A stretch of DNA of 63,846 nucleotides, filler included, from Octopus bimaculoides (GCF_001194135.2; 6 parts of 5 records of this genome joined end to end with filler, not necessarily neighbours in it), one strand, 5' to 3'; positions 22,972 to 48,450 are shown, counted from the first letter of the whole stretch. Translations and numbers: made by a program. Notes: generated by a model not told the origin, from the letters alone.

Positions 22972-22982
22972 TGGAAAATTAT
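22972..22982 (+). promoter_or_regulatory. TonE/ORE-like (NFAT5) motif TGGAAAATTAT upstream of ISYNA1
   Basis: Exact match to TGGAAANNYNY about 90 bp upstream of the TATA box; a short motif, so a chance match is possible. Confidence 0.3.
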
Positions 22983-23230: not shown

Positions 23231-23356
23231 ATGTCTGCCAAGCTTTTGAAAGTTAAATCTCCCAATGTCAAATATACAGATGAATATATTGAAGCAGAAT
23301 ATGATTATTCGACCACAAAAGTTACTGATGATGGGGATTTTCTCATCGCCGAACCA
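23231..23356 (+). CDS. ISYNA1: Myo-inositol-1-phosphate synthase, coding exon 1 (MSAKLLKVKSPNVKYTDEYIEAEYDYSTTKVTDDGDFLIAEP)
   Basis: ATG in gcaccATG context; 126 nt = 42 codons; typical MIPS N-terminus (V.SPNVKYT...I...Y.Y.TT.V); donor CCA|GTACGT, phase 0, splices in frame to exon 2. Not listed in the ORF track. Confidence 0.9.
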
Positions 23357-23857
23357 GTACGTGTCAAAAAAACGAATTTAACAAATTTTATCACCTGATG
23401 TTCATTAATACTTTTATTAGAGTGTATATATTAAATGTGTATAAATAACATGCATGTACATTTCCATATAAATAAATACGTATATGTACATACAAACGGC
23501 ACACATGTTCATATTTGCTTATATAGATCTATATCTATATACATATATGTATGTATGTGTATATATAGACGCACGCATATAGCTGTTTCCAATTTATTAT
23601 TTTCATAAAGCAATGAATATAAATGAAGATAGTGCCTAAATCAACATTAAATTCCATATTTCTATCGTTACATGCATCATTTTATGTTTGTGCATGTAAT
23701 ATATTTGTGTATATATTAACGCGTGTGTGTGCGCGCGCGCATGTATGTGTATGTATATAATTCTCCGTTGAAATTCAGAATATATCTGATATCACCTTGT
23801 ATTCATTGTTGTTCATTTGTTTTCTGTTTGCTTTTTCTTTTTCAATTTTCTCTTCAG

Positions 23858-24143
23858 GTAACAACTAAATACACTTTTCGAACCGAGAGGAAAGTTCCTC
23901 GTCTTGGTGTGATGCTGGTGGGCATCGGAGGCAACAATGGTTCCACCTTGGCGGCAACGTTGATAGCAAATAAATGCGGGATGAAATGGCCAACTAAGAA
24001 AGGGATACAAGAAGCCAACTTTTATGGATCAATCACCCAATCTAGTACAGTATGTCTGGGGAACAGTCCTAGAGGAGAAGAAGTTTTTGTACCTTTAAAT
24101 TATCTACTACCCATGGTAAAACCCGAGAATATCATTTTGGATG
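23858..24143 (+). CDS. ISYNA1: Myo-inositol-1-phosphate synthase, coding exon 2 (NAD-binding Rossmann motif)
   Basis: Acceptor ttttctcttcag|; encodes VTTKYTFRTERKVPRLGVMLVGIGGNNGSTL...ANFYGSITQSSTVCLG...LLPMVKPENIILD; donor G|GTGAGT, phase 1 (286 nt). Confidence 0.97.
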
Positions 24144-24879
24144 GTGAGTGCCTTAGCGCTGCTTTGATGTCTGTTCTAACCACACTTCGATTAGTGATCG
24201 GCTTTGTTTAGCTGGTTTGTATTTTGTCTAGAAATGGAGATTTTAAATTGAGTTATTCTTGAATTGTTTACATTCTTCACTTTCGGAACTGCTATTCATT
24301 TTCTTCTGGTACACTGATTCCAAGTTTCTGGAATTTTCTATCGTACATTGATTGATCAGTCTCTCAGTCAGTCAGAATATTTTCTTTTTTATTCGGAAAA
24401 TATCCATGCATATCATATCTTTTCTCTTTCTAGATTATGGTTTAAATTGTTACATATCTAAGAATTTATTTATTCTCGTTCTATTATCAGATTCCAGACA
24501 ATTTCCTAAGAATTAATAGCATACCTACCGATGTGTGCTGCCTCCAAATATCGGAATTAGTTGTGAAAATTTGTTTTGGAGTTTCGGAGTTTCGGAAAAT
24601 TCATGCACTACCACTTCGTTTCCTCGTAACTTGCTGAAAATTTAAAAAAATTCTTTCTTGAAATTTTCAGCTAATACATTTCGGATAATGTAGATTAGGA
24701 TTATCTCAGAATTTGATGTTGTAAAAGAAATTGTAGGATCGGATAATTCATACACCTTAATTTTGTTTTCTCATAAATTTTGATGAATTATGATCCTCCC
24801 CAACAAAATTTTTTCACATCAAATTCCAATTTAATCATAATCCACATCTGAAACGTATCTATGTTTCTTTTATTGTTTC

Positions 24880-25193
24880 AGTCATTGGACTGCGGCCATG
24901 CTGGGGCATTACCTCGAAGAATTTTGGTCGAACGAATCGACCCCAGTATTTTCTTTTTAAGCCTGGTACTTATTCTCTCCGTTCTCTTTTCCCGAATCAC
25001 TAATGTTACGGGAACGTGGGCACAACGACACTGGTTGTCAAGCGGTTTTCCTCTATCAAATCCACTCACAAGGCTTTGGCTGACAACCCGAGACAATAGT
25101 AGAAGACACTTGCACAAAATGTCACGCAGTGGGACTGAACCCGGAACCGCGTAGGTCGGAAGTAAACTCCTTACCACATAACCACGCCTGCGA
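24880..25193 (-). mobile_element. SINE family A, internally deleted, in ISYNA1 intron 2
   Basis: TTGTTTCAGTCATTGGACTGCGGCC...GGGACTGAACCCGGAACC. Confidence 0.8.
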
Positions 25194-25734
25194 CTATTGT
25201 AGAAAAATTCAATAAAAGAATATCCGTTTTTCAGACTTAAAAGAAAAGAAAAATGTCGAGAGGTGGGAATTATGCGAAACGTCATCCCTCCCTCCAATTT
25301 TCTTTTTCACACCAAATTCCGACATAATCGTTATTACTTGTAGAAAATTTTATTAAAAACAATATGCATTTTTCATAAAGTTTTGAAGTGACGAAGTCGT
25401 GGGTGGGCACACATCTGTAGTTTTATCGAATTGTTCTTCGTTAACCCTTTGCACTCTGGAATTTTCCATTTCTTCTAATCACGGTTTTAGGGATATATGA
25501 AGCATTTTCTAGAATGAATTGTTATTGTTTTTATTATTTTGACTGGGTTTTAGGCTTCTATCTGACTATTTTGATATTTTGCATTTCTCTTTGGTTTTCT
25601 TGACTTGGTTGTGAGATTATGAAGTTCCAAAGACCCTGCGCATGGCCTTTGCTGGTCCTTTCCTGATACCTTTTAGAATTCAAAGCATTTCTTTATTTTG
25701 TGTAAGATTTTCGGTAAGCTTTTTTTTTTTAGTT

Positions 25735-26122
25735 TACTCTTACTCTCTCTCTTTTAGTTGTTTCAGTCATTTGACTGCGGCCATGCTGGAGCACTGCCTT
25801 TAGTCGAGCAAATCGACCCCAGGACTTATTCTTTGTAAGCCTAGTACTTATTCTATCGGTCCCTTTTACCGAACCGCTAAGGTACGGGGACGTAAACATA
25901 CCAGCATCGGTTGTCAAGCGATGTTGGGGGGACAAACACACATATATATATATATATTCGACGGGCTTCTTTCAGTTTCCATCTACCAAATCCACTCACA
26001 AGGCTTTGGTCAGCCTGAGGCTACAGTAAAAGACACTTGCCCAAGCTGCCACGCAGTGGGACTGAATCCAGAACCATGTGGTTGGTAAGCAAGCTACTTA
26101 CCACACAGCCACTCCTGCACCT
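25735..26122 (-). mobile_element. SINE family A, full length, in ISYNA1 intron 2
   Basis: Full reverse-complement match, with partial CpG loss in the head. Confidence 0.88.
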
Positions 26123-26479
26123 AGTTTGCATAGAATTTTTACAGGTATTTTCTACAAGCCACCAAGGGAGTCTATGCAGTTGCTGGATCTGCTAGAAATA
26201 CCAGCCAAGTCTCCCTCAAATCAAACCATACNNNNNNNNNNNNNNNNNNNNNNNNNNNNNNNNNNNNNNNNNNNNNNNNNNNNNNNNNNNNNNNNNNNNN
26301 NNNNNNNNNNNNNNNNNNNNNNNNNNNNNNNNNNNNNNNNNNNNNNNNNNNNNNNNNNNNNNNNNNNNNNNNNNNNNNNNNNNNNNNNNNNNNNNNNNNN
26401 NNNNNNNNNNNNNNNNNNNNNNNNNNNNNNNNNNNNGAAAGGGCATATATAGTTTTAGATGAGTCGTGAAGATTTTTAT

Positions 26480-29400
26480 CTTTTTAACTAATATTATAAA
26501 TACAAGAATTCTCCAAAATTGTTATGCTACTTACTGTATGGTGCATAACTTGCAAAACTTTCCTGGAGATCACCAAATATGATAGACTCTGGAATTTCCT
26601 AATATTACATGTGTCTATTCTAGCCAGTTATAGCAATCACCATAACTGTAAAACTGGAATTTTCCAATATGTCTGTTGACTCTGAAGCTGTCTTTCACTC
26701 TTTGTCTCCATATATGACAGACTCCAGAATTTTCCAGTATTGCTTGTATAATATAATCTTCTGACATTCTTAGTTCTGACCTGCTACAGCACTCTTCCAA
26801 GCTTACCTTTTGTTATCATAACTGATAGACAATAGAATTTTCCAGCATATGTGATGTGTGTTGTGTTGATCTGTTATAACAATCTTTTTGTTATTCTAAG
26901 TAACAAACTCTGGTACTTTTGAGTGAGAACTTTTGTCACCATGAATATTTCTAACTTCATAATATTGCTTCCTAGCTTTTGAGTATTTTCTACTCTTGTC
27001 ACCAAAAGTAACAGGCTCTGGAATTTTCTAATACTACTTATTTGATGTTTGTCAGTTCTGGCCTTCCAAGGAAGTTTTTCAGTTTAACCTTTTGTCTTCA
27101 TAACTGACAGATTCTGAAATTTTCCAATATTATTGATAACTGTTAATTCTAATCTGCCATGACAGTCTTTAAATTTTGTCATTATAACTGACATTCTGGA
27201 ACTTTCTGATGTTCCTTTTATGATGGCTGTCAGTGGAGGAATGCTATAGCAGTTTTCCAATTTGTCACTATAACTGACACTCTGGAATTTTCTGTTATTT
27301 CTTGGGTCTTTTAGATTTTCTTGCTGACCAGTCTTTCAGCATTACTTTTTCTCATCAAAAGTGACAAACTCTGGAATTTTCCAATACTGTTATGTTGGCC
27401 TCCCATAACTGTTTTTATTTTTGTTCAACATTTCTGATAAACTCTGGAATTTTCTAATATAATACATCTGTTAGTTATAATACTTTTTATCTCTATAACT
27501 GGCAGACTCTAAAATTCTCCAATATTAAAGGGTAAAGACCACCCCTTTGGTCATGAATGACCATGGGGATTGCACCTAGGAAGTTACCCTCCAAGGTACA
27601 AGTCCGGACAAGTTTGTTTATGGAAGACCAGCAGTCGCCCATGCATACCAGCCTTCCCTCACCATACCAGCGATGTTATCTATGGGAAAGGCGAAGGTTG
27701 ATATATCTCCTATATTATATATCTGTTAGTTCTGGCCTGTTTTAGCAGTCTTTATATTTTGGTGCTAAAACTCTGGAAAGTTTCAATATAATAAGATGTC
27801 CATTAGCTCTGGAACAATCTTTACACTTTGTCACTATAATTAAGATCCTGGAATTTTTCAGCATTACTTATGTCATATAATTCTGGTCTACAATAGCAGT
27901 CTTCCAAGCTTACATTTTGTCATACACTTGCATTTTGCTAAATGATATATTCGTTCTGGCCTTTGTCACCATATCTGTCAGACTGGAATTTTCCAGCATT
28001 ACTTTGATGATACCTATCTGTTACTTCTCTGTAGCCGAGCAGTCTTTCAACATACCTTTCTGTCATCATATGTGACAGCACTCTGGAATTTTCCAATATT
28101 ATTTGATGTCTTTTATTTTCGTCTGCCATAGCTGCTTTCAGTTTTTGTCACCCTAAGTCTGAAATTTTCTTTTATTACATTTCTCTTAGTTCTGACTTGT
28201 TACAGCAGCCTTTATTTTATGTCACCTGTCACCATAACTTAAAAACTTAGGAATTTTTCAGTTAAAGCAAAACATCTACTAGTGCCAGAGCAGTCTTCAC
28301 CCTTTGTTATCATAAGTAACAGACCCTGGAATTTTCTAGTACTACTTATGTAATGTCTGTTAGTTCTAGCCTACCATAGCAGTCTTTAACTTCTGTCACA
28401 GTATCTGACAGATCCTGGAACTTTCTAGTTGTCCTTTTATAATAGTTGTTTGTTCAGACAGCAGTCTTCCAACATTACGTTTGTCACTGCAGTTGGAATA
28501 TCTTCTAGTATTACTTATGTCTTTTAGTTGTCTAATGTTGGAATACTCAGCAGTATTCCAACATTACCAATTTTCCAATATTACATTATGTTTATTATTT
28601 TTGGCCTGCCATAGCATTCTTTAACTTTGGTCAACTTGACCGACATACTCTAGCGTTTTCCAATAATATAAGATGTCTGTTAGCTTTGGAGCTGTCCTTT
28701 TGTCACTGTAACTGAAGCACTTTGGAATTTTCCTATAATATGTTTCTATTAGTTCTGGTCTGTTATAGCAGTCTTCCAGTATTATCTTTTGTCATCACAA
28801 ATGAAATGTTTTGGAAAGTTTTCATAACTTCGGAATTTTGTAATATCATAAGATGCCTGTTAGCTCTGGAACTTGTTTTTATCCTTTGGTACTATAACCA
28901 GCAGACTGGAATATTCCAGTATTATTCACATGATGTCTGATAATTCTTGTTTGCTCGAGTAGTCTTTAATTTTGTTACTAACTGAGAAACACTGGAATTT
29001 TCCAGTATTTCTTATATATGATAAGTTAGACCTGCTATAGCAGTCTTTCAGCCCACCTTTTGTCACAGAACTGGTAGATTCTGGAACTTTCCTGTATTAT
29101 ATTTCTGTTCTGACCTTTTATAGCAGTCATACCTTTTGTCACCGTAACTAACAGACTCTAGAATTTTCCAACATTATATAGCTGCTCTGACTTGCTATAG
29201 CAGTCTTCTATTATTATCCTTGGTTTCCGTAAATGACACACTGTGTTTTCCAATATTATATTTTTATTAGTTCTTCATCTTTTGTTAAAGCAGTTGCTGA
29301 CTTTTGACACCAAAAATGACTTTAGAATCTTCCAATTTATAATATTCTTCTTACCTCTGGATCTATTTTTGCTCTTTGTCATAACTGACAGATTCTAGAA

Positions 29401-31330
29401 TGTTCCAGAGTTATATATTGTTTCTTAGTTCTGCCCTACAATCTTCCAAAATTACCTTTGTCACAAACTTCCATTAATATATTGCTGTTAGTTCTAGCCT
29501 GTTAAAGTAGTCTGTTAATATTACCTTTTGTCACCATAAATGACACACTCTGGAACATTCCAATATTATATTTCTGTTCTGGCAGTTTTTAATTTTTTGT
29601 TATAGCAGTCTAGCTTTTGGCAAAAAACTGTCAAATGTCTATTAGCTCACATAATGCCTGATAATTCTTGTGTGCTATAGACTTTGGAATTTTTCAGTAT
29701 TTCTTATTTGATAATTCTGGCCTGCTGCAGCAGTCTTCCAGACTACTTTTTGTCACAGAATTAACAGGTGCTTGAATTCTCCAATATGATATTTCTGTTA
29801 TTTCTAACCTGTTATAGCAGTCTTAGCTTTTTGTTACTACAAATAACAGACTCTGGAATTTTTCAGCATTTTATGTCTGTTTTGACCTGTTATAGCAGTT
29901 GTCCAGTATTGCCTTTTGTCATTATAAATGACACATTAAGGAATTTTTCCAATATTATATTTTTATTAGTTCTTCATTTTTTGTTATAGCAGCCTTTGGC
30001 TTTCAGTACCAAAAATGACACTCTGGAATTTTCCAGTATTGTAATAGTTTTCTTAGCTCTGGATCTGTTTTTACTCTTTGTCATAACTGACAGATTCTAG
30101 AATGTTCCAGTATTATATATTTTGTCTCTTGGTTCTGCCAAATAATCTTCCAAAATTACCTTAATCACAATAACTGACATACTCTGGAATTTTCCAATAA
30201 TACATTTCTCTTGGTTCTAGCCTGTTACTGCAGTCTTTTATTACTTTTCGTCACCATGCTGCAGCAATCTTTAACTTTTGGCACCAAAACTGACAAACTC
30301 AGGAATTTTCCAACATTATAAGATGCCTGTTAGCTTTGGAGCTTGCTTTTACCCTTCAACACTATAACTAACAGACTGTGAAATATTCCAGTGTTACTTA
30401 ATGATGTCTGATAATTCTTGTATGATAATTCTTTTTTTTACCAACACTGAGAAACTCTGGAATTTTCCAGTATTTCATAAATGATGTCTGGTGGTTTTAG
30501 CCTATGATAGTAGTTTTCTGTCACAGAAAACCTTTTGTCACAGAAGTAACAGATTCTTGAATTCTCCAATATTATATTTCTGTTAGTTCTAGCTTGTTAT
30601 AACAGTCTATGCCTTATGTCACTGTAACTGAGTGACATCTATTGCTTAGATGATGTCTGTCACTGTTCCCTGCTATAGCTGTCTATCAATATAACACTCT
30701 AGAAGTGTCCAATATTATATTATGCCTATTATTTTTGTCTGCTTTAGCAGTCTTTACTTTTTGTCATAAAAAGTGACAGTCTGGAATTTTCTTGTGTTAT
30801 TTAAATGGTGACAGATTCTGGAGTATTTCATGTAGAGCAGAGTATACATGTTGTTCCCAGACTTTGAATTTTTTTTATGTATTTCTTATATTATGTCTGC
30901 TATTTCTGGCTTCCTGTAGCAGTCTTTATCTTCTGTCATTATTACATTTTGTTCTATAATTGACAGACTATGGAATCTGGCGAAGTTACTAATTATAATG
31001 TCTGCTAGTTTGACCTGCTGTAGCAGTTCTTCTGCCTTACATCACCATAACTAACACTGGAATTTTCCAATGTCACTTGTGATGTCTGTCAGTTTTCATT
31101 GCTATAACAGTCATGCCAACCAGCATCTTTAGTCACCTTATCTGTGACTCTGGAATTTTTCATTGTTATATGATGTCAGTTTATCTTGGTCTGCTATATT
31201 TTTGTCTGTATAATTGACAGACTCTGGAATTTTTCAGTATTATTTACATGATGTCTGTTAGCCCTGTCTTGCCATAGTAGTCTTCAGGATTACCTTTTAG
31301 TCACCATTACTGAGATTCTGGAATATTCTG
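26480..31330. repeat. Diverged intronic tandem array A, about 85-95 bp unit, roughly 50 copies
   Basis: Recurring unit ~ACTGACAGACTCTGGAATTTTCCAATATTAT..GATGTCTGTTAGTTCTGGCCTGCTATAGCAGTCTT..CTTTTGTCACCATA, many indels, no long ORF on either strand. Confidence 0.9.
27528..27703 (-). mobile_element. 5'-truncated SINE family D inserted in array A, with target-site duplication
   Basis: Homologous to 35631-35810; flanked by TCTCCAATATTA (27516-27527) and TCTCCTATATTA (27706-27717). Confidence 0.8.
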
Positions 31331-31599
31331 TGCTTCATAGAAAATTTCTGAAAATTGTGGATGATAATCTGCTACAATTTTCCAGCAGTATACATCTGAG
31401 TTTTATAACTGTTTAAAAGGTACTTCCTCTAAATTTTAAAACATTGCTTCAATATTGATTATTAGCATTTACTCTATATCCAACATTGATAAATGGTCAA
31501 CAACATAAAAGAACTAGTAAAGAATTTCCTTATATATAGAATGCTTCTTGGCTTGCTACATTGACCAGCATCAGGTAGATTCTCATTTATGCATTCTTA

Positions 31600-33090
31600 A
31601 TAACCACTTTAGAAATTTTCCCTCAGTTTCGTGTTATAAGAAAGTGTATTAAATAAAGCTTTGGTATGTGAAATGAAAATCAAGGTTTAGCTTACTTAAT
31701 AAATTCTATTTGAATTTTCTAATTATTCTATATGACATCTAGGATATGAACTAGAGTTTTACTTAAAATAATGCATTTTCATAAATTAAATTTTCCACCA
31801 ATTCAATGCAGCTTATGAAATATACAGGGTTTTGTATATCTCATAAGTTTTATCTTTATCAGATTACTTTAGAATTTTTTAATTGTTCTATGCAATTTGC
31901 AAAATATGAAATAGGGGTTTTGCTGATCAGAATGTATTCTAAATTTTCCATCTATTAAATACTGCATAACTTTAGAAGATCTGTATGGAATTTTCCAATT
32001 GTTTTGTGTGACATTAACATATGAAGATAAGGCTTTAATAGCATAATTTATTCTTCTGGAGTTTTCTATCAGTTCAAGGCTGCTTATTAGACAATGGTTT
32101 GATTACCTCAACTTCAGCTGCTGGTTCTGGAATTTTCCAGTTAATCTATATGATATGCAGTGTATGAAATAAGGTTTTGCTTACCACAATACATTCTAAA
32201 ATTTTGTATTAATTTATTGAGATATAAGCTTCTATTACTTCAGCAAATTCTTCTAGAATGTTCCAGTTTTTCTGCATGCCATTTAGAGTATGAAATTTTG
32301 CTTACCATAAATACATTATTTTAGAATGGAATTTTCCATCAATTCAGTGCTACTTAAGAGATATAAAGGATTTGTCTAGTTTAGCTTTAGCAGATTCTGG
32401 AATTTTCCAATGAAATAGATATGTCTTTCTTCAATATATTCTAATGTAATTTTCCATCAATCCATCAATTCTTTACTGCTTATGAAAGGTTTTGTTTGTT
32501 TTAGCAAGTTCTTGTGGAATTTTCCAATTGTTCTATATGGCTCACAAAATATGAAATATGTTTTTCCTTTTAACATATTCTGGAATTTTCCATCAATTCA
32601 ATACAGCTGATATAAAATTCAAGCTTTTTATTATTTTAGCTTCTACAAATTTGAATTTTCCAATTGTTTTATGTCATACAATGTATGAAAATAGTATTTT
32701 ACTTCAACACCCTTTTCTAGAATTTTCTACCAATTCAATGCAGCTTTTGAGATTATCAGAATTTTTCATTACTTTAGCTTCTGGGATTTTCCAATTATTC
32801 TCTATGATATTTAGAATATGAAATAGTTTTGCTTACCATATATAATGCATTGTTCTAGAATTCCTATCAATTCAGTGCAGCTTATGAGATATAAAAGACT
32901 TTTGCTTATTTTAACAGGTTTTCTAGAGTTTTCCAATTGGTTTATGTGATATGCAGGATGTGAAGTAGTTTTGCTTTTCATTCTTCTAGAATTCTTTTCA
33001 TTTCAATTTCGTCTCAAGAATTTATTTTATTCTAACAAAAAAAAAAAGGCTTGTAGGTTGAAGGTTTTTCATCATTCTTATGCAATTTTA
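31600..33090. repeat. Diverged intronic tandem array B, about 65-70 bp monomers alternating as a ~135-140 bp dimer
   Basis: Alternating units GGAATTTTCCAATTGTTCTATATG..ATGAAATAAGGTTTTGCTTAC and AGAATTTTCCATCAATTCAATGCAGCTTATGAGATATAA; shares only the GAATTTTCC core with array A. Confidence 0.8.
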
Positions 33091-34062
33091 GAGTTGTTTT
33101 ATGGTGTATCTATATACCTAAATAGTTCTCAAATTGGTCTCTTGTTTGTGAAGATATAGAATCTTAATCTATGCTATATAATGCTGAATGTATTTTTAGG
33201 CACTTTGATCTTCAATAGCAGTACTTGTCTCTCAGTCCATCTATTGTAAATTTATTGAACTGTCTTACTTACAATTAATCTTTTTTGATTAATTTTGATT
33301 GCCCCATTTCCCCATTATATAACAAACTCAATCTCCTTTAACTCTGACAAACAAACGAACTTGAATTTATGTACAATTTCCCTCCCTTTTACCCCTTTCA
33401 TGTTTTCCCCCTATTCAAATAAGGCTCTAACTAGAAGTTATGTTAAGAGATTTGAGGTTCAGGTAAGTGTGCAGTTAGGTATTGTATTTTCTCTCCTGTA
33501 TGTATCAAGTCTCTCATTAGACTTCAGAATAGAGCACTCATGAAAGAGGCAGATGAAATTGCAAAGACTAAGGAATTTCTGTTTTTGAGAGATGACCTGA
33601 AAGAAATTAAATTGGTAAAAATAAAAATAGAAATTGAAAATATTTCTGGTATGATGTTGGTGCATGAAAGTGAATGACTTTGTTTGAAGAATGAAATAAA
33701 TGTGAATCAGAGAGAGATATAGAGAATTTATGCATGAATAACATGGATGTTAAACAGAAATAGTTGAAGTGAACTAAAGAAATCTAGATTGGGATAGGCC
33801 AATGAAATCATTACAGTTTAGGGAAGAAGAAAAGAAGGAAAAAAAAAAAACAATTGAAGAAAAGAAATCTTGCAAGCCATTTAGAATGTAATTCTGTCAG
33901 TGTTTAATTTTCTGACTTCTACAGTCCAAAATGCTTTATTAATTCAAATGAGCTATATTAGAATCAAATCTACTCAAGATATGTTGTTAGAATATCTCAC
34001 AAACATAATTTAACAGGTTGCTTATTGGTTGATGATTCCAAATAATTTTTCTAATCAATGAA

Positions 34063-34883
34063 ACATTTTCTCTGAAACTAGCTTGAGAGATTTTTTTATA
34101 TCTTGGATTTTTTCCATAGTGATAGTTAAGTTTTTGTTGAAAAACAAAACTGGGATTGGATTTATACTGGATTGTTTTAAAATAAGTAGAATGGTAGAAT
34201 CATTAGTGTTTGGCAAAATACCTTTTGATATTTAGTTCTTAGTGATGCTTGTGCTTTAAAGACAGATGAAAGTATAAACCCTAGTGCCTATTATGAGGTT
34301 ATTTCTACCCTTTGTATTATTATTAACTTTGACTGGCTTGAAGAAGGAATAATGCTACACAGATCCTCTAATTAATGGAATATCTGGGATGTTGTCTGTC
34401 ATCCTATGTAACACAAAGCCGATATAAGAAAATTTAACTACATCAGTTCTTCTCAAAGTGAGTCGTACTACATCATAGTGGAGGGGGCAGTGCAAAATTT
34501 TATTTGGATATTAGGAACAAAGGGGGAAGTAGGGATGAGAGGGAACAATAGATAAACCTGTATCGTCTTTTTAGTTTTTGACTCTTATCTAAAAAAAAAC
34601 ATTAATTGTAATATTATGATAAACCTGCTTGTTAGACACAATCACAACAACCTCATCAACAATAATAAACTTAAATGTGTATATGTAAATAAGCAAAGCT
34701 GTATATATATATATATATATATATATAACATTTTCTCTGAAAATAGCTTTAGAGATTTTTTTTTATCTTGGATTTTTTACATAAGTAATAGTTAAGTTTT
34801 TGTTGAAAAACAGAACTGGGAATAGGATGGGCCTTATTCTGGATTGTCCTAAAATCAATAGAATGGTAGAATCATTAGTGCTT
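34063..34883 (+). repeat. Local direct duplication of about 150 bp (34063-34210 and 34728-34883)
   Basis: Both copies read ACATTTTCTCTGAAA.TAGCTT.AGAGATTTTTTT..ATCTTGGATTTT...GTTAAGTTTTTGTTGAAAAACA.AACTGGGA...TAGAATGGTAGAATCATTAGTG. Confidence 0.85.
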
Positions 34884-35580
34884 ATAGTTTTTGCTTTATA
34901 GTAGGATGGTGCTATATGTGGTGAGTAGCCACATATGTCAAACTAGTACTGAGAACTAAATTACTCTGGTCTGATATTACAAATATGTACATCAAAAATG
35001 GTGGTGGTGAAAGGCATTGATAATGTGTTAATAAAGGATAGGGGTGATAATTTTAAAAACAAGGTTTAAGAGGCGCTGAATATTAATAATAATACAGCTG
35101 AAACAATGTAAAGCTATGAATGAAACATTGAGTGTAAAAAATCTAATTTGAGACTGGTGGCGGTGAGTAAATGCTGACTTCAATTTGTGATATCAGTACG
35201 TGGAAAGGTTGGAAATTTTTCATATGTACAGTGATAAGTAACTTGTAAGGATTGTATGTGAATTTTTAAAAGGAAAAAGTTGTTTGATTCTGGGTTTGGG
35301 TTGGACCAAAATTTTATCAATACCAAGACATTGTGGTGATTGAATAATATCTGTGATTTATGAATCCTTAAGAATGAATAAAAGTGATTTAATGAAGAAT
35401 GTTGGATTTTGTGAAATCTTTAATACATTCCAAAGTTACATGACTACTTTTAATCATTGTCTTTTCAGCTGTCCAGTAGATTGAATATTGCAAATTTTTT
35501 CCTGAAAAAACTTAGTAAATATAAGTTGAAGGTTGAATGAAAATTTAAATTGTTGTAGTAGTTGTAATTCACTGTTCTTC

Positions 35581-35626
<46 letters not shown>

Positions 35627-35630
35627 TTTT

Positions 35631-35980
35631 AAGGGTAAAGACCCCCCTCCCCATTTAGTCATGAATGACCATGTGATTGCACCTAGAAAGTTACCCTCCA
35701 AGGCACAAGTCCGGGCAAAGTTGTTTATGGAAGACCAGCAGTTGCCCCTGCATATCAGCCTCCCCTCTCCATGCCACCAATATTATCCAAAGGAAGGGCA
35801 AAGGTTGATACAGCTTGGCATCAGTGATGTTGCAACTCATTTCTACAGCTTAGTGAACTGGAGCAACATGAAGTAAAGTGTCTTATTCAAGAACACAACA
35901 TACAGCCTGGTCTGGGAATCAAGCTCACTACCTCATGATTGTGAACCTGATGCTCTAACTACTGAGCCATGTGCCTTCAC
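35631..35980 (-). mobile_element. tRNA-derived SINE family D, full length
   Basis: Minus-strand head GTGAAGGCACATGGCTCAGTAGTTAG...GATTCCCAGACC, central GTTGTGTTCTTGAATAAGACACTTTAC domain, tail GGTCTTTACCCTT followed by poly(A). Confidence 0.8.
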
Positions 35981-36801
35981 AAACACATACACACCCACAT
36001 ATACATATATAAAAAAATATTTGTGTTAGTGTTTACATAGGTTTTATATATTATGTAGTGAGGGTTATAATCCAAACTGTGACCTCTTGAAGCATATCTG
36101 CTTATTCCAGTGCTCCAGAATTGTATATAGATGTTATATTTGTGTGAGGTATGCATAAGAGTTGAAAAATACTGGGAAATATCTTCTTGCAGAGTTATTA
36201 CTTATCAAAACAGGAGATTGAAAAAATTTATAATACCAAAAATGTTTCCAGTTTTCTGTTATGATACATTTTAGATATATATTTATATATATGTGTTTGT
36301 GTGTACACCAACAAATGTATGTGTTCTTATATATATGTGTGAGTGCGTGTGTACGCAAACAAATGTATGTGTGTGCCTATTTATATATGTATGATGTATC
36401 TATACACACGTGTATAATTGTGTGTATGTGTATATGGGATATTATTATTTGTTGAAAGCTAAGTCTGCATGAGTTGCTACTCAGGGTTTCACATTCTTGT
36501 TCTTGAAGAGTTGTCAAATGTCAGGAATGAGGAACTCCACATAGCAACTCTTGTAGACTCAGTTTTTAAATAAGTTATTCCACTCTGCAAGTGCATCCAT
36601 TTTAGCATACACCTCAGAGGAGTTGAGTCAGTTCCGACTAGTGGGAATATGGTTTTCATAGGAAGGCTGTACAAAAAGTATTGAAAGTACTGAGTGAATA
36701 TCTTTTTGGGGGGGTCAATTGCAATTCACCCAAGTGTGAACACAATCATCTATATTATATATGCATACCTACAGTACACACATATTATGTGTGTGTGGTG
36801 T

Positions 36802-36874
<73 letters not shown>

Positions 36875-36875
<1 letters not shown>

Positions 36876-37083
36876 GGCAGCAAGCTGGCAGAATCATTGG
36901 CACGCTGGATGAAATGCTTAGTGGTATTTCATCCATCTTCATGTTCTGAGTTCAAATTCTGCCAAGGTCAACTTCGTCTTTCATCCTTTTGGGATTGTTA
37001 ATATAAGTACCAGTTGTGTACTGGGGGTCAGTATAATTGACTATTCCTCTCCCCTAGGTCTTGTTCCTATAGTAGAAAAGATA
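36875..37083 (+). mobile_element. SINE family C, CpG-decayed
   Basis: CTGGCAGAATC..GAAATGCTTAG..CTGAGTTCAAATTC..TTTCATCCTTT..AAGTACCAGT..CCTATAGTAGAAA; homologous to 60719-61175. Confidence 0.8.
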
Positions 37084-37681
37084 TATATCTAAAATATGTA
37101 AATATAAAATATGTATATATAAAATAAGTATATTAGGTAGAATGGGTAATGTATAAATCCTTCCATCTATAGGATAGAAGGAACTATTACATTTCAGTAT
37201 ACTTTAAAATAATATAATACCCAAAAGTATGCAATAATGTTTTGTGTATGAAAAGTGTCTTTTGTATATAGTCAGGTCATTTTTGTTGATGTCAAACAGT
37301 AAACTTGGTTAAAAGTTCAGTTCCTGTCACAATAAGTTTTGAATTATGACAAGTTTGTTCTCGTTTGGTATTTTTATATTTATATTGGGTTGAATTTTGT
37401 TTTATTGCAAAAAAAAGCAAGATGTTAGCATAGTATTGTTTAAGATTGACATACATATCCTTGAGAATTTGATTTGGTAGCTTTCTTTTTAAAACTAATT
37501 CGAGACTCAACTTGTTTGTTATCCTGTTGAGAAAGCAGCTGTGTATGTTTAGAAAGCAGGTTGTATCAGAGGATAGTTCTTCTCTATACGGAGAAGAGTT
37601 TGTTGGGAAATAATTATGCTATACATATTCTGTTGTTTTGGGCAGTGGCAAAAATATCTTCTGTATGTGTGTGTGTGTGTG

Positions 37682-37744
<63 letters not shown>

Positions 37745-38980
37745 GTACGTACGTACGTACCTATATATGTTTGTATGTACAAACAAAATGTACTAGCTTC
37801 ACCGAAATATATTTATACACACACACACACAGTAAAAAAGAATTTTGTTAAAGTGATTATCTCCACATGGTGAGTTGTAATGAAAAAATATATAATAACA
37901 GAAGGAAAATGCACACAGTTTACATAGTTTTAATATATTTTAAAGGGCAGAGTATTGCGATAGTCGACTAGTTTTGCATTTTGCTAACATTGAAATTATT
38001 GCAATTTTGTATTTTCTTAAGACGTTTTTAGTCCATGTTCTTGTAAATGAATCGGCATGTAGAAAAATCTAAGTGGGGGTATATATGAGTGAGTGAGTGC
38101 ACAAATGAAGAAAAGAGGCACTTGGCACATTTGGTAGGAGTTATGTATATTTTTAATAAGTTTCATTCAGCAGTGGATGACTTAAAGTTTGTTGGCTTGT
38201 AGGATAGATTAATCTCATATCTGATGAGATGGGTTTCTCCTACGATCCAATGCAACTTGGAGCTGAGTCAACCTCTCATTAAAATATATACGTATACTTT
38301 ATAACTTTTATGTAACTATACATGCATATATAATTATGTAAAAGTTGAATTAGAAAATTAGAAACATTATCCGATATAGAAAACAATGTGTTGGATATAG
38401 TGGGTAGATAGAAGCTGACAGTTTACCCAATTTTGCCCTTGGTGACACTTGAAGTAGTCTGTCAAATTTTGATATACCATTAAAAAATATATATACCCTT
38501 AAAGTATATTCTGTTTTGCTATAAAGCAATGAAATTACTTTGACAGAAAAAGTCAAATTTAAGACATATATTATCATTTTTGAAACACTTGAGGTTGACA
38601 TCTAGCAGCTATTGGCTGTTCCCAAGAGTCAGATAATTGCACAAGCTGATATTTAGTGAATTACATACGCTGAAAATAATCCATCCTCAGGTGGTATTGA
38701 TGTAATTTTTCTAACATTGAAAGCTGAATTTTCATTTTTGTTCACAACTAACATATACTGGAGTTGTTTGTTCAAAATAACTATGTATTTATACAAGTGA
38801 ATTTGTTCATATAATTTAACTCTTCTTTTATTTCAGTTTATCATAATTTAATAATTTCCGTTATCATTGTAAATAACTATTACTTTATTGAGTTGTGAGA
38901 TATAGAGCAATTCACATGGCTACACATTTTTTTTTCTTTTTAGCCAAGTAGGAAGTGTTCAAGAGTAAAAAAAAAATATG

Positions 38981-39200
38981 GGCAGCACACCAGGCGAAGT
39001 GCTTGGCAGTATTTCGTCTGCCGTTATATTCTGAGTTCAAATTCTGCCGAGGTCGACTTCACCTTTTATCCTTTCAGGATCGATTAAATAAGTACTAGTT
39101 ACTAGTTGTGCACTGGGGGTTGATGTAACCGACTTAATCCCTTTGTCTGTCCTTGTTTGTTCCCTCTCTGTTTAGACCCCTGTGGGCAATAAAGAAATAA
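38981..39200 (+). mobile_element. SINE family C, 5'-truncated
   Basis: CTGAGTTCAAATTCTGCCGAGGTCGACTTCACCTTTTATCCTTTCAGGATCGATTAAATAAGTAC. Confidence 0.78.
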
Positions 39201-42200
39201 AAATTTGGGATTAGGGAAATTTAGCTCAATCTTTTGAAATAAAAGAATGTATTATGGATTTTTTAAAAAATCTAAAGATACTAGTCCAACTCCTAGTGTG
39301 AAAATGAAAATAATGTTTCAAACAGTGAGATATATTATGCAAGCAGTATAATTTTTAATTGTTTAGGCAAGTTAAAAAAACAATAGCTACATATCTATAT
39401 GAATAAAAACAATTCAGGAATCATTTGGTTAATTCGTTTTCATAGTGAAATTAATAGTTAGTGATTGTGTGCCCAAGATAGCATTGTCCTTTCACAAGAT
39501 CATTTATTGTCATGTGTAATAGAAAATGCCATAAAATTAGTTGTCTTCAGTAATGACTAAAATTTTTGAAGATTAAAGACATGATGAATGATCTCCCCTC
39601 TACGACTCAACGAAAAAGTAGCAACGTTTATGTTTTATGGTCAACGTCTAGATGCCATTAAATGCATTTTATGTTATTTTAAAATGTAGTTCAAATTTAC
39701 AAGTTTACCTTTTGCATTAGTATTTTTCTAGTAGTTTGTAACTTGTTAAATATTATTAAATGTCTCATTTTGACGTGAAAATAGTAAATAAATCTTAAAT
39801 CAAATCATTTCAAAGTATTGATCATAGAAACTCTATACAAATTATTTTAAAATAAAACCTGTTGATGAAATATATAATTTTTAATACAATATTGTTACTT
39901 TAAAACCAAAAAAAACAAGAGATTAAAAAAAAAATCAATTGCTGGTGTTGTAACAGCTTTCATGTGACCCCTGCATCAACAGGTGTCAACTGGAGAATGA
40001 CTAGACCATGGAAAAAAACTCAGTATTTCTGCTATCTCAGGATTGTTTTTAGAGGAAAGAGATAAAACTGAACTGTAGGAGAGGGAGTGCTCCATCTTGT
40101 TAGCTGATTGTCTTTGAAAGGCTCACTATTATAACAAATTTAACTAATTAACAATAAATACTCTCAAAGCGAAATCCATATAAAATGTTAATAACATTTT
40201 TCACAAAACCAAAAGCTTTATTATTGTTGGTTTCATATCAAATAATACTTCATCTTAAGTGGACATAGTATATCTGGATAAAAGTATATTCAAGAAAATA
40301 TACTTTTTGTGCATATTGAGAAATATGCTCAAAAGGTCAGATTTTTTTTTATGTACATTTAACTGCATATGTCTTACAATGATAACTCATATTAATTTTT
40401 GATATAGCTTCAGTTATTACTATGGTTGTCTTTGTGTTGTGTTTTTTTATTGTGCAGTCATTGCAAGTTATTGTCCTTGATATGCTTATAAGTTTGTCTT
40501 TGTTTCTATAACCCATGGAGAGTTTTGTAGGTGTTGAGTAAGACGACCCAAATTTGCTATAAGACAAACACCACTTAATGATAAAGATGTCAGGAAAATT
40601 TTTCAATTTCAGTAACTAAACAGAAACAATGGCAAAATTTTGGTAATTTGACATCAAAATAATCTTACATGATGTAGTATTGTGGCTGTCATGAAATTCC
40701 AGACATGTTTTTCCTTGTATTTATTGAAGATGTCATATACCTTCAGTTATAAAGAGAGATGTTAGCTAAACATGCTGAAACAGCTGATGAATTCAAATTA
40801 CTGGAACACAAGCAACATGGCAACAAATCAATAAATGACTCTTTAAGAATAAATTCACAAGCATTTTGTAAATGGAATGAAGTTGATGGAAAACTCTGAG
40901 CAAGAGAGAATTAAACTGTCGTAATTGTGGTTAAAGACACAGGAAAAGTGTCTAGCATTCAAATTAAGTGACCTGAATATGGAAAGCCACTTCACTTTAC
41001 TAAATATTATTGGTCAGGTCCTATCTATGGCATCAATGAATTTTCATACGAAGACATGCTCAGTGTGCCTCCATGCTTAATGTCAACAATGTACATCTTA
41101 ATTAATGTTTTAAATATATACTATAAATTGAACAATGTTCCAATTGGAATGAAAATAGGTAGTGGTGCATCTTGTTCAATTATCCTTTATTCCTATATTG
41201 ATATGATAAATTCAGCGTTATTATTCATCAGTTAAACATTTAGATAACTAGTTGTTCAGCACTGAAGATGAACTCATTGCTAATTTTTCATGGAGGAATT
41301 AATGTCACAGATTTTCCTTTGACTTCAGATTAAATGGAATAGGGCATTTTATACTGAGGCACATAACAGCTATTGACAATGTTTGTGAAAGGTCATATAG
41401 CTAGTGTTCTATGGGTAGAAGAATAAGCAACATAAGCCAATTTTACTGCTGAAATCATTAACAGAGGCCCCTAGTAATCATCTATTATTATTAGAAAAGA
41501 TTATTCTCTGAATGCTGAACTTATTTTGAAAATTATTAGTGGGAATATTATCCTGTAGCAGTCATTAGCCAGATTTAATAAGTTAATGAAACTAGTTTAA
41601 TATTGAGTGTAAGGGTTATGCCATTAATTTGGTGCATTGAATGATTGAGACAATTTCTATTTGGCTGTAACTTGTTCAGTCATGGACCAGCAACTTTTAA
41701 AAACTATTTTCAGTGATCTGTCACAGGGAACTTCATAAACAGAATTGTTTGGTAAGGGCTATGTTGCAATACGATTTTACTGTAAAATGGGTTTTAGGTA
41801 AATTAAGATTGCATATTTCCTAACTTGACTTGAATACAAAAGATTTGAAACTTACACTGGTTTTCTGTTCACCTTACTAATTAGCCAAAATTCATGTGAA
41901 CACCTAAACACAAAAACGACTGAGTTGGTTAACAATCACTTGACGCATACAGGGAAATAATGAATATATCTTAGCTATAGTTGTTTGGATTGAGAGTTGT
42001 GGGCCTGGATAAGCCATTGTGTTAATTTGTCTTTCTGCAAACTGAAGAATTCTAAGAATTTATAAGGGTGTATATTCAATCTTTCCACTTATACTTTTAA
42101 AACAAAACAGTTTTAGAATTAGTTTGAGTGTCATGCAATTTATAATGCTGATACTTCAGGTAGTGATGTTTTCAGGTGATATGTTAATTCAATTAATGAT

Positions 42201-48046: not shown

Positions 48047-48450
48047 GTTGGGATATCTCATCTGCCAACGTAGCTGATGCAATGGAGAGAGCTCAAGTTC
48101 TAGATTACAATTTACAGGTACAAGTGAGACCGTATCTTGAAGGGATTCGTCCGAGACCTTCTGTTTACATGCCTGACTTCATAGCAGCTAACCAAGCAGC
48201 ACGGGCCAATAATGTATTATCTGGTACAAAGCAAGAAATGTTGGAACAACTACGGAAAGATATTCGTTCCTTTAAAGAAAATAACGCTATTGATAAGGTT
48301 ATTGTTCTCTGGACAGCTAACACTGAAAGGTTTTGTGATGTTCGTCATGGACTAAATGACACTGCAGATGCCCTAATAAAGAGCATCCGTAACAATGAAA
48401 GTGAAGTGTCACCATCCACATTGTTTGCTGTTGCCAGTATTTTGGAAGGA
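48047..48450 (+). CDS. ISYNA1: Myo-inositol-1-phosphate synthase, coding exon 3; gene 3'-truncated by scaffold end
   Basis: Acceptor ctttatcttatcaag|GT completes the Gly codon from exon 2, giving GWDISS; contains [16 protein letters not shown] and the conserved [10 protein letters not shown], ending [14 protein letters not shown]; donor GGA|GTAAGT. The NGSPQNT and SYNHLGNNDG exons were not found before 50634. Confidence 0.97.

What the first reader, a model, noticed from the sequence alone, without database searches (positions are those of the whole stretch)
26480..33090. A 6.5-kb intronic array of NFAT5/TonE-like elements inside the inositol synthase gene: candidate satellite-built osmotic enhancer
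Seen: the best-conserved part of both tandem arrays in ISYNA1 intron 2 is GGAATTTTCCA, which is TGGAAAATTCC on the minus strand. By eye there are about 16 exact copies (e.g. 26656, 28994, 30186, 32582) and about 10 more variants fitting TGGAAANNYNY, all in one orientation, while the flanking unit sequence is full of indels. Established: TGGAAANNYNY is the TonE/ORE bound by NFAT5/TonEBP in osmoprotective genes (SLC5A3/SMIT, aldose reductase, BGT1), and in euryhaline tilapia MIPS and IMPA are hyperosmotically induced through NFAT5-responsive OSRE1 enhancers. Inference: tandem amplification may have built a homotypic NFAT5 (or Rel/NF-kB) binding cluster that couples myo-inositol synthesis to salinity in a cephalopod. 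I know of no description of this.
Basis: partly seen in the sequence, partly recalled or inferred. Interest (0 to 1): 0.78.

Follow-up and report, generated by a model that had tools for sequence, protein, structure and literature searches.

The report
Intronic repeat array with stress-motif core
About 9 kb of an intron in the octopus inositol-synthase gene is an old, decayed tandem repeat whose best-kept 12-14 bases form a GGAA..TTCC palindrome.

Summary
The piece is Octopus bimaculoides MIPS/ISYNA1 on the + strand. Coding intron 2 (24144-48046) carries two adjacent degenerate tandem arrays: about 57 units of roughly 85 bp at 26438-31390, and about 21 sub-units of roughly 68 bp at about 31600-33050. 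GGAATTTTCCA occurs 17 times on one strand (0.03 expected), and 26 sites fit TGGAAANNYNY. In array 1 the core block is the best-kept part of the unit. After composition correction it ranks 1 of 86 windows, and 11 perfect cores are seen against 0.8 expected from the units' own flanks. The effect per site is modest (substitution identity 0.84 against 0.77). Other blocks are also kept, and in array 2 the core is not uniquely conserved.

The NFAT5/osmotic reading is not favoured over alternatives. The motif is a dyad, TGGAA-nn-TTCCA. At equal stringency more units keep a heat-shock-element pattern (36) than TonE (26) or a relaxed Rel pattern (21). Eleven perfect three-pentamer HSEs occur. TonE-critical bases are not the best kept. 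The tilapia OSRE1 consensus is never matched.

The array is ancient (internal duplicates at most about 81% identical). Genome-wide copy number, orthologous introns and expression could not be tested. Verdict: a real old minisatellite with a candidate stress-factor site cluster; function unproven.

The parts
23231..23356 (+). MIPS/ISYNA1 coding exon 1 (ATG to GT donor)
   Evidence: Reading; identical to residues 1-42 of P0001.
23858..24143 (+). MIPS/ISYNA1 coding exon 2
   Evidence: Pfam NAD_binding_5, E=4.5e-29; splice sites read; matches P0001.
24144..48046 (+). Intron 2 (23.9 kb), which hosts the arrays
   Evidence: GTGAGT donor at 24144; AG acceptor at 48045-48046.
48047..48450 (+). MIPS/ISYNA1 coding exon 3
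   Evidence: Pfam NAD_binding_5, E=4.7e-48.
24326..24338 (+). Isolated TTCTGGAATTTTC, a perfect three-pentamer HSE and 12/13 match to the core block, 183 bp into the intron
   Evidence: No unit-like flank was detected by the array-1 HMM.
25456..25468 (+). Isolated exact core block CTGGAATTTTCCA, upstream of the assembly gap
   Evidence: weak HMM hit at 25453-25475, E=0.02.
26232..26436 (.). Assembly gap (N run); the true 5' edge and length of array 1 are unknown
26438..31390 (+). Array 1: about 57 head-to-tail units. Consensus: ACCTTTTGTCACCATAACTGACAGACTCTGGAATTTTCCAATATTATATATATGTCTGTTAGTTCTGGCCTGCTATAGCAGTCTTT
   Evidence: Iterated nhmmer, MAFFT and hmmalign; repeat families.
27525..27703 (+). 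Dispersed-repeat (SINE-like) fragment inserted into one unit after the array formed; a second copy lies at 35628-35810
   Evidence: 84% identity over 184 bp; it interrupts unit 27482-27671.
28993..30623 (+). Old higher-order duplication inside array 1 (blocks of about 700-780 bp, about 70% identical)
   Evidence: Self-BLAST: 28993-29838 against 29685-30623 (70% over 949 columns), and 28703-29149 against 30165-30629 (72%).
31600..33050 (+). Array 2: about 21 sub-units of 64-76 bp, alternating type A (core+AATTGTTCTATATGATATGCAGAATATGAAATAG) and type B (core+TCAATTCAATGCAGCTTATGAGATA), with a dimer of about 137 bp. It ends at an A-run (33040-33050).
   Evidence: (families D8, D11, D13).

Best explanation
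What it is (shown). The feature is an old intronic minisatellite that is no longer being homogenised. A unit of about 70-85 bp was multiplied head-to-tail, partly in blocks of about 750 bp, in the first 9 kb of MIPS/ISYNA1 intron 2. It then decayed to about 65-80% identity and was hit by a dispersed-repeat insertion. Each unit carries the dyad (C/T)TC-TG-GAA-TT-TTC-CA, that is TGGAA-nn-TTCCA, and this block is the slowest-decaying part of the unit.

How it most likely works (inferred). The block is kept because it is a protein-binding site. The array would then be a homotypic cluster of some 35-40 usable sites for an oligomeric factor that reads GAA/TTCC half-sites. The heat-shock factor trimer (nTTCnnGAAnnTTCn) fits the tolerated variation best. 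NFAT5 and Rel-homology dimers are the next candidates. The model is an intronic, stress-responsive enhancer or factor-loading platform for a gene that makes the osmolyte and chemical chaperone myo-inositol. The motif does not reveal which stress (heat/proteotoxic or hyperosmotic) would act.
For: Enrichment and single orientation: 17 exact copies against 0.03 expected.

Retention of the core in array 1. It has a composition-corrected residual of +0.18, rank 1 of 86 circular windows; the next independent block reaches +0.09. Substitution-only identity between old duplicate blocks is 0.84 in the core against 0.77 outside. Split by base class this is A/T 0.88 against 0.82 and G/C 0.78 against 0.68. 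There are 11 perfect cores against 0.77 expected, and 26 cores with at most 1 mismatch against 4.0 expected, from each unit's own flanks. The top 8-, 11- and 14-mers all come from ACTCTGGAATTTTCCAAT, which is an alignment-free result.

The same block is essentially the only sequence shared by arrays 1 and 2, and it survives as isolated copies at 24326 and 25456.

Fit to HSE. GAANNTTC matches 38 sites and RGAANNTTCY 36 sites, against 26 for TonE at the same 14 bits and 21 for GGRRNNYYCC. YTCYRGAANNTTC matches 21 sites (0.03 expected). There are 11 perfect trimers in the piece. The base before GAA is a purine in 45/47 units and the base after TTC is a pyrimidine in 51/51, as the HSE rules in PMC8379338 require. 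The GAA/TTC triplets (0.77-0.92) are kept slightly better than the n positions (0.70-0.83).

Precedent: the human satellite III array is activated through HSF1 in heat and TonEBP/NFAT5 in hyperosmotic stress (PMC10813801).
Against: The constraint signal is modest per site, about 30% fewer substitutions. Other blocks (TTTTGTCAC, GTCTGTTAG, ATAGCAGTCTT) are also above average; for example, ATAGCAGTCTT shows 6 perfect copies against 1.06 expected.

The central TT and the downstream TATTA are unspecified in every candidate factor model, yet they are also kept (0.79-0.83). This argues for block-wise rate heterogeneity or a longer, unknown site. In array 2 the core is not uniquely conserved.

Most array-1 units have CTC, not TTC, as the first pentamer (35 C against 10 T), so many sites are only two-pentamer HSEs.

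Units are not independent, because variants are inherited through block duplications, so the p-values are overstated. The array shows no recent homogenisation and tolerated a repeat insertion. The prior that any one intronic minisatellite is functional is low.
Confidence: 0.4

Rival explanations
1. Neutral relic. The array is a decaying minisatellite with no regulatory role. The core looks conserved because of non-selective rate heterogeneity. The flanks contain slippage-prone AT/TA runs and indel hot spots. Unequal exchange and gene conversion would start preferentially in the best-matching segment and so keep it uniform. The resemblance to TonE, HSE and Rel sites would be a coincidence of an AT-rich palindrome.
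For: The internal duplicates are old (70-81% identity) and there has been no recent homogenisation. A dispersed-repeat insertion was tolerated. Several blocks besides the core are also above average. Positions unspecified in all the factor models (central TT, downstream TATTA) are kept nearly as well as specified ones. Array 2 shows no special retention of the core. The substitution-only advantage is small, 0.84 against 0.77. RNAalifold finds no structure and Rfam finds nothing in the arrays.
Against: The core is rank 1 of 86 after composition correction, and perfect copies are about 14 times the expectation. The core survives where the unit flanks are no longer recognisable (24326, 25456, array 2). 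Variation at the two spacer bases leaves GAA and TTC and their spacing intact in about 8 units.
Confidence: 0.36
2. The cores are TonE/ORE sites on the minus strand, bound by NFAT5, and they couple myo-inositol synthesis to salinity.
For: 26 matches to TGGAAANNYNY in one orientation. The core TGGAAAATTCC is 10/11 identical to the reporter TonE TGGAAAATTAC (PMC11838016). NFAT5 is present in molluscs (PMC11838016, PMC11898675). MIPS is osmotically induced in tilapia through GGAAA-type enhancers (PMC7374092). A single further TonE-type site, TGGAAAATTAT, lies 259 bp upstream of the ATG.
Against: Conservation is dyad-symmetric, not TonE-shaped. The essential GG (C9/C10) is changed or missing in 12 and 14 of 53 units, while the TonE-free positions A3/A4 are the best kept. 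The common variant TTTTCTA destroys TGGAAA but leaves the HSE intact. OSRE1 is matched 0 times in the arrays. Known osmotic elements are TSS-proximal (PMC7374092). HSE captures more units at equal information content. From general knowledge, octopuses are stenohaline osmoconformers.
Confidence: 0.1
3. The block is the target of another sequence-specific system that acts on repeats rather than on the host gene. It could be a long (about 24 bp) site for one of the many octopus C2H2 zinc-finger proteins, or a recombination-promoting 'minisatellite core' in Jeffreys' sense. It could also be the internal repeat of a mobile element that is present at many loci.
For: The conserved block is about 24 bp long (A-CTCTGGAATTTTCCA-TATTA), longer than any of the three factor sites. 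Two arrays with otherwise unalignable units share it. Array 2 ends in an A-run.
Against: No further copy of the unit occurs in the other 20 kb of the piece, whereas true dispersed repeats recur there 2-3 times. No terminal repeats or coding remnants of a mobile element were seen. There are no data on recombination or zinc-finger binding.
Confidence: 0.1
4. The array acts at the RNA level. The repeats would be transcribed in sense within the pre-mRNA and act as structured RNA, a small-RNA cluster or a protein sponge (GGAAU motifs, as in HSATIII RNA).
For: All units are in the sense orientation of the gene. Each carries GGAAU and a pyrimidine-rich TTTTCCAG that resembles a 3' splice site.
Against: RNAalifold predicts 0 conserved pairs over 44 units. 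Rfam gives no hit in the arrays. A single orientation is automatic for tandem duplication. The dyad symmetry of conservation points to double-stranded DNA recognition.
Confidence: 0.04

Closest known systems
Human satellite III (HSATIII, (GGAAT)n) at nuclear stress bodies
   Same: Both are tandem arrays whose repeated GGAA(T) motif serves as a multi-copy landing site for stress transcription factors. HSATIII uses HSF1 in heat shock and TonEBP/NFAT5 in hyperosmotic stress (PMC10813801; SatIII-HSF co-crystals are cited in PMC8379338). The octopus core contains GGAAT and fits both factors' consensus sequences.
   Different: HSATIII is a megabase pericentromeric 5-bp satellite in head-to-tail arrangement, transcribed into lncRNA. 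The octopus array is 6-9 kb with 70-85-bp units, one palindromic site per unit, inside an intron of a metabolic gene, and no binding or transcription has been shown.
Heat-shock element (HSE; at least 3 inverted nGAAn pentamers bound by an HSF trimer)
   Same: The piece has 11 perfect TTCnnGAAnnTTC sites, 21 YTCYRGAANNTTC and 38 GAAnnTTC in the arrays. The Y-R dinucleotide between TTC and GAA and the purine before GAA are kept (rules from PMC8379338).
   Different: Classical HSEs are promoter-proximal, with one to a few per gene. Here there are dozens, 0.2-9 kb into an intron. Most array-1 units have CTC instead of TTC in pentamer 1, and there is no fourth pentamer.
TonE/ORE (TGGAAANNYNY, NFAT5/TonEBP) and synthetic 8xTonE reporters
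   Same: 26 consensus matches. The core is 10/11 identical to TGGAAAATTAC. The multimerised layout resembles artificial 8xTonE reporters (PMC11838016). The host gene belongs to the osmolyte pathway.
   Different: The positional conservation is not TonE-shaped. Natural TonEs are single or few in number, and lie upstream.
Tilapia OSRE1 enhancers of MIPS, IMPA1.1 and GS (PMC7374092)
   Same: The same gene family (MIPS) is involved, the sites share a GGAAA-type core, and one OSRE1 (in GS) is intronic.
   Different: The 17-bp consensus DDKGGAAWWDWWY(D/N)NRB is not matched by any unit. OSRE1 copies lie at -232 to +56 of the TSS or in intron 1, as single copies. Their binding factor is unidentified.
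Repeat-built enhancers: GGAA microsatellites bound by EWS-FLI1, intronic VNTR enhancers (own knowledge, not checked here)
   Same: In both, tandem amplification of a short factor motif creates or tunes enhancer activity.
   Different: Those are short, homogeneous, polymorphic repeats with experimental proof. This array is ancient, heterogeneous and untested.
Jeffreys-type minisatellite 'core' sequences (own knowledge)
   Same: A short core is shared between different minisatellite arrays whose units otherwise differ.
   Different: Those cores are G-rich and linked to recombination. Here only two adjacent arrays are known, and the core is an AT-rich palindrome.

Membership tests
TonE/ORE (NFAT5 site) | Sequence fits TGGAAANNYNY | tested here: met
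   26 minus-strand matches in 26438-33090, with fewer than 1 expected.
TonE/ORE (NFAT5 site) | Constraint falls on TGGAAA rather than on the N positions | tested here: not met
   Plus-strand C9/C10 (the essential GG) are kept in 0.77/0.74 of units. The N/Y positions A4/A3 are kept in 0.89/0.89. The pattern is dyad-symmetric.
TonE/ORE (NFAT5 site) | NFAT5 binding and hyperosmotic activation | not testable with these tools
   Needs EMSA, CUT&RUN or reporters. The literature shows only that molluscs have NFAT5 (PMC11838016, PMC11898675).
OSRE1 (tilapia osmolality/salinity-responsive enhancer 1) | 17-bp consensus DDKGGAAWWDWWYDNRB (refined form has N at position 14) | tested here: not met
   0 matches in either array. 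Four scattered matches elsewhere in the piece are at about chance level.
OSRE1 (tilapia osmolality/salinity-responsive enhancer 1) | Location within a few hundred bp of the TSS, or in intron 1 | tested here: not met
   The arrays start at least 1 kb downstream of the ATG, in intron 2 (PMC7374092).
Heat-shock element | At least three contiguous inverted nGAAn pentamers | tested here: met
   11 perfect TTCNNGAANNTTC in the piece, all in 24326-32727. 21 YTCYRGAANNTTC against 0.03 expected. Most other units have only two perfect pentamers.
Heat-shock element | Auxiliary rules: Y-R between TTC and GAA, and a purine preceding GAA | tested here: met
   The spacer is TG or TA. The base before GAA is a purine in 45/47 units and the base after TTC is a pyrimidine in 51/51 (PMC8379338). 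Transitions alone could also produce this.
Heat-shock element | HSF trimer binding and heat inducibility of the host gene | not testable with these tools
No literature on octopus MIPS regulation was found.
NF-kB/Rel site | GGGRNNYYCC | tested here: not met
   0 matches in array 1 and 1 in array 2. Only the relaxed GGRRNNYYCC fits (21 sites), and the outer G/C are the least-kept core positions.
Tandem repeat / minisatellite | Head-to-tail units in one orientation with a derivable consensus | tested here: met
   nhmmer finds 54 significant + strand units in array 1. There is an 86-column consensus, and array 2 shows an A/B dimer structure. TRF detects only one fragment because identity is about 65-70%.
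Satellite DNA family (genome-wide) | Many arrays or high copy number elsewhere in the genome | not testable with these tools
   No cephalopod genome or reads were available. No further copy lies in the other 20 kb of the piece. Translated searches and a metagenome scan found nothing.
Structured or small-RNA cluster | Conserved base-pairing with covariation, or a match to a known RNA family | tested here: not met
   RNAalifold predicts 0 pairs on 44 units. Rfam gives no hit in 26438-33090.

The most novel reading that the evidence does not exclude
The array is a genuine repeat-built intronic stress enhancer in which one palindromic site, TGGAA-nn-TTCCA, is shared by HSF and NFAT5, as on human satellite III. 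Heat/proteotoxic stress and hyperosmotic stress would then converge on synthesis of the chemical chaperone and osmolyte myo-inositol in a cephalopod. The number of surviving cores would set the response strength.
Probability: 0.12. Interest if true: 0.7.

Novelty: new member of a known kind. Interest (0 to 1): 0.35.

Why it matters
If the cores are bound, this would be a natural, ancient example of an enhancer assembled by tandem amplification of a stress-factor site. It sits in a gene whose product protects proteins and cell volume, in an animal group whose cis-regulation is almost unexplored. The roughly 75 natural variants of one site would work as a built-in mutational series. They could show which factor reads it, because HSE-, TonE- and Rel-specific positions vary independently among units.

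If it is neutral, it is a useful caution. An AT-rich GGAA/TTCC palindrome satisfies three unrelated consensus sequences at once, so a consensus match inside a repeat is weak evidence for any one pathway.

Tried and rejected
Genome-wide copy number and transcription are therefore untested.
- Orthologous introns: the protein search returned the O. bimaculoides protein but no other cephalopod MIPS. That protein is not on record in the contig index.
- Proxy for genomic abundance through spurious ORFs. A 1653-aa stop-masked translation of array 1 found nothing. The 73-aa array ORF searched against 1.84 billion representatives gave only two unrelated repetitive proteins (Chara braunii and an ENA metagenome protein), which are chance matches multiplied by their own repeats.
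- An exact 22-mer scan of the metagenome contigs gave 0 hits.
- Structured-RNA idea. The unit consensus contains inverted repeats (CCATAACTGACAGA/TCTGTTAGTTCTGG and CTGCTATAGCAG). RNAalifold gives 0 conserved pairs over 44 units, so this was rejected.
- Rfam and tRNA scans found nothing in the arrays. The weak mir-297-like hits are TA/TG low-complexity sequence far below threshold.
- Homology between arrays 1 and 2 outside the core block is not above shuffled controls. It therefore cannot be decided whether the shared core reflects common descent with selective retention or capture of a fragment by the founder unit of array 2.
- The 'ascertain in copy A, measure in copy B' test was not discriminating: the core scored 0.85 and the best other blocks 0.85-0.86. 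It was replaced by phase-based tests.
- A literature search on octopus MIPS regulation found nothing relevant. No description of octopus satellites with this unit was found.


Full report
**Context**

The usable piece (21517-50634) carries the 5' part of an inositol-3-phosphate synthase gene on the + strand. Translated exons hit Pfam NAD_binding_5 (myo-inositol-1-phosphate synthase) at E=4.5e-29 and 4.7e-48. The joined exons are 100% identical to the Octopus bimaculoides protein A0A0L8H4N0.

From the sequence:
- coding exon 1 is 23231-23356;
- exon 2 is 23858-24143;
- exon 3 starts at 48047.

The intron that holds the finding is therefore 24144-48046, 23.9 kb.

**The observation**

GGAATTTTCCA occurs 17 times, always on the + strand, between 25458 and 32592. 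Shuffles give 0.03. TGGAAANNYNY matches 26 times on the minus strand of 26438-33090 and twice on the plus strand.

TRF sees almost nothing because the copies are only about 65-70% alike. Seeded repeat finding and an iterated nhmmer profile resolve the structure.

- Array 1 (26438-31390) has about 57 head-to-tail units of 57-190 bp, mode 77-89.
- Its 86-column consensus is ACCTTTTGTCACCATAACTGACAGACTCTGGAATTTTCCAATATTATATATATGTCTGTTAGTTCTGGCCTGCTATAGCAGTCTTT.
- Array 2 (about 31600-33050) has about 21 sub-units of 64-76 bp. These alternate between two types and form a dimer of about 137 bp.

An assembly gap (26232-26436) hides the 5' edge of array 1. Isolated core copies at 24326 and 25456 suggest the repeat once began about 180 bp after exon 2.

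**Age**

The best internal duplicates are blocks of about 700-950 bp at 70-72% identity. Short stretches reach 76-81%. A dispersed-repeat fragment (27525-27703, with a second copy at 35628-35810) splits one unit. The array is old and is not being homogenised.

**Is the core more conserved than the flanks?**

Yes in array 1, by every measure tried, but moderately.

1. In an hmmalign alignment of all 53 segmented units, the consensus base is kept as follows across the core:

| Position | G1 | G2 | A3 | A4 | T5 | T6 | T7 | T8 | C9 | C10 | A11 |
|---|---|---|---|---|---|---|---|---|---|---|---|
| Fraction kept | .70 | .77 | .89 | .89 | .83 | .79 | .87 | .92 | .77 | .74 | .79 |

   The whole-unit class means are 0.67 for A/T columns and 0.57 for G/C columns. 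After subtracting these class means, the core window ranks 1 of 86 circular windows. Its residual is +0.18; the best block clear of it reaches +0.09.

2. Unit phase was assigned by the profile rather than by the core. On that basis, substitution-only identity between anciently duplicated blocks is 0.84 in the core and 0.77 outside. By base class this is A/T 0.88 against 0.82 and G/C 0.78 against 0.68. That is about 30% fewer substitutions.

3. If each core had decayed like its own unit's flanks, 0.77 perfect cores would be expected and 11 are seen. For at most 1 mismatch, 4.0 are expected and 26 are seen. The next best block elsewhere (ATAGCAGTCTT) shows 6 against 1.06.

4. Without any alignment, the commonest 8-, 11- and 14-mers of both arrays all come from ACTCTGGAATTTTCCAAT.

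Caveats:
- The units are related through block duplications, so the counts are not independent events.
- Three other blocks (TTTTGTCAC, GTCTGTTAG, AGCAGTCTT) are also above average.
- The kept block is about 24 bp long (A-CTCTGGAATTTTCCA-TATTA), not 11.
- In array 2, other segments (AATATGAAATA in type A, TCAATTCAATGCAG in type B) are kept as well as the core.
- Outside the core block, arrays 1 and 2 are not alignable above shuffled controls.

**What is the motif?**

It is a dyad: TGGAA-TT-TTCCA, often CTGGAA-TT-TTCCAG, preceded by (C/T)TC. Three consensus sequences fit it at once.

| Pattern | Information | Sites in the arrays |
|---|---|---|
| TonE, TGGAAANNYNY (minus strand) | 14 bits | 26 |
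| Relaxed Rel, GGRRNNYYCC | 12 bits | 21 |
| Strict NF-kB, GGGRNNYYCC | | 0-1 |
| HSE dimer, GAANNTTC | 12 bits | 38 |
| HSE dimer with auxiliary rule, RGAANNTTCY | 14 bits | 36 |
| YTCYRGAANNTTC | | 21 (0.03 expected) |

Perfect three-pentamer TTCNNGAANNTTC sites number 11 in the piece, all inside 24326-32727.

The HSE rules quoted in PMC8379338 are obeyed in these respects. There are at least three inverted nGAAn. The TTC-GAA spacer is pyrimidine-purine (TG or TA). The base before GAA is a purine (45/47 units), and its mirror base after TTC is a pyrimidine (51/51).

The common variants can discriminate between the models:
- TTTTCTA (C10>T) and CTAGAA (G1>A) leave an HSE intact.
- TTTTCTA destroys the TGGAAA of TonE.
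- Both variants destroy the Rel GG/CC.

The conservation profile is mirror-symmetric about the centre. The TonE-essential GG (C9/C10) is kept less well than A3/A4, which TonE leaves free.

So the tolerated variation looks most like an HSE, less like TonE and least like Rel. The preference is slight, because G/C positions decay faster everywhere in this AT-rich intron. The central TT, unspecified in every model, is also kept.

The OSRE1 consensus (DDKGGAAWWDWWYDNRB, refined to N at position 14) and its role in tilapia MIPS, IMPA1.1 and GS are confirmed (PMC7374092). The same paper places those elements at -232 to +56 of the TSS, or in intron 1 for GS. It calls NFAT5 only the 'prime candidate' whose binding 'is still unclear'. 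No unit of either array matches OSRE1.

NFAT5 is reported in molluscs (PMC11838016, PMC11898675). The reporter TonE TGGAAAATTAC differs from the core by one base at an N position (PMC11838016).

The nearest precedent for a repeat array used by stress factors is human satellite III. It is driven by HSF1 in heat and by TonEBP/NFAT5 in hyperosmotic stress (PMC10813801).

**Alternatives examined**

A structured or small RNA is unlikely. The consensus has inverted repeats, but RNAalifold finds no conserved pair in 44 units, and Rfam has no hit in the arrays.

A dispersed mobile-element origin cannot be excluded. Against it, no other copy of the unit lies in the remaining 20 kb of the piece, where true dispersed repeats recur.

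Every route to other genomes or reads failed or was closed.

**Verdict**

Shown: there is a real, ancient, one-orientation tandem array in MIPS intron 2, and its slowest-decaying block is a GGAA/TTCC dyad.

Inferred, at about 0.4: the block is kept as a multi-copy protein-binding site and the array works as a stress-responsive intronic platform. HSF is the best-fitting reader and NFAT5 or Rel come second.

Nearly as likely, at about 0.36: the array is a neutral relic with block-wise rate heterogeneity.

The specific NFAT5-salinity model is possible (about 0.1) but is not favoured by the positional evidence. The idea of repeat-built factor-site clusters is known, so this would be a new member of a known kind. 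It is interesting mainly as a testable natural mutational series.

Noticed in passing
window 22972-22982 (+): A single TGGAAAATTAT lies 259 bp upstream of the ATG. It fits TonE and is 10/11 identical to the reporter TonE. This is the position where the tilapia OSRE1 elements sit. One hit in 2.6 kb is near chance level.
   Followed up: partly
window 23452-23468 (-), intron 1: TATGGAAATGTACATGC matches the refined OSRE1 consensus. Three more matches are scattered at 34102, 37603 and 42776. The expected count is about 1, so this is probably chance.
   Followed up: partly
window 24853-25191, 25750-26118, 49648-49858 (+): Three copies of one SINE-like dispersed repeat (77-81% identical). Two of them lie between exon 2 and the arrays.
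   Followed up: partly
window 27525-27703 and 35628-35810 (+): A second dispersed-repeat family (84% identical over 184 bp). One copy is inserted inside an array-1 unit, which dates the array as older than the insertion.
   Followed up: partly
window 26232-26436 and 50012-50021: Assembly gaps (N runs). The first abuts array 1, so the array may be longer than assembled.
   Followed up: no
window 34062-34211 and 34727-34883: A duplicated segment of about 150 bp (78-93% identical), 665 bp apart, each copy next to a (TA)n run.
   Followed up: no
window 23440-23760, 34702-34727, 35594-35618, 36805-36874, 37682-37740: Long (TA)n and (TG)n microsatellites. They account for the sub-threshold Rfam 'mir-297/mir-466'-type hits, which are low-complexity artefacts.
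   Followed up: yes
window 33500-35500: GC skew switches from about -0.12 in the arrays to +0.26/+0.30 just downstream. This marks a compositional boundary at the 3' end of array 2.
   Followed up: no
window 23889-23898, exon 2: The palindrome GGAAAGTTCC (Rel-like and HSE-dimer-like) lies inside coding sequence. It is most likely a by-product of the codons.
   Followed up: no
P0001 (UniRef A0A0L8H4N0), residues after ...ASILEG: The deposited 453-aa octopus model is shorter than typical animal MIPS proteins. It may skip part of the central region, so the gene model downstream of exon 3 may be incomplete.
   Followed up: no
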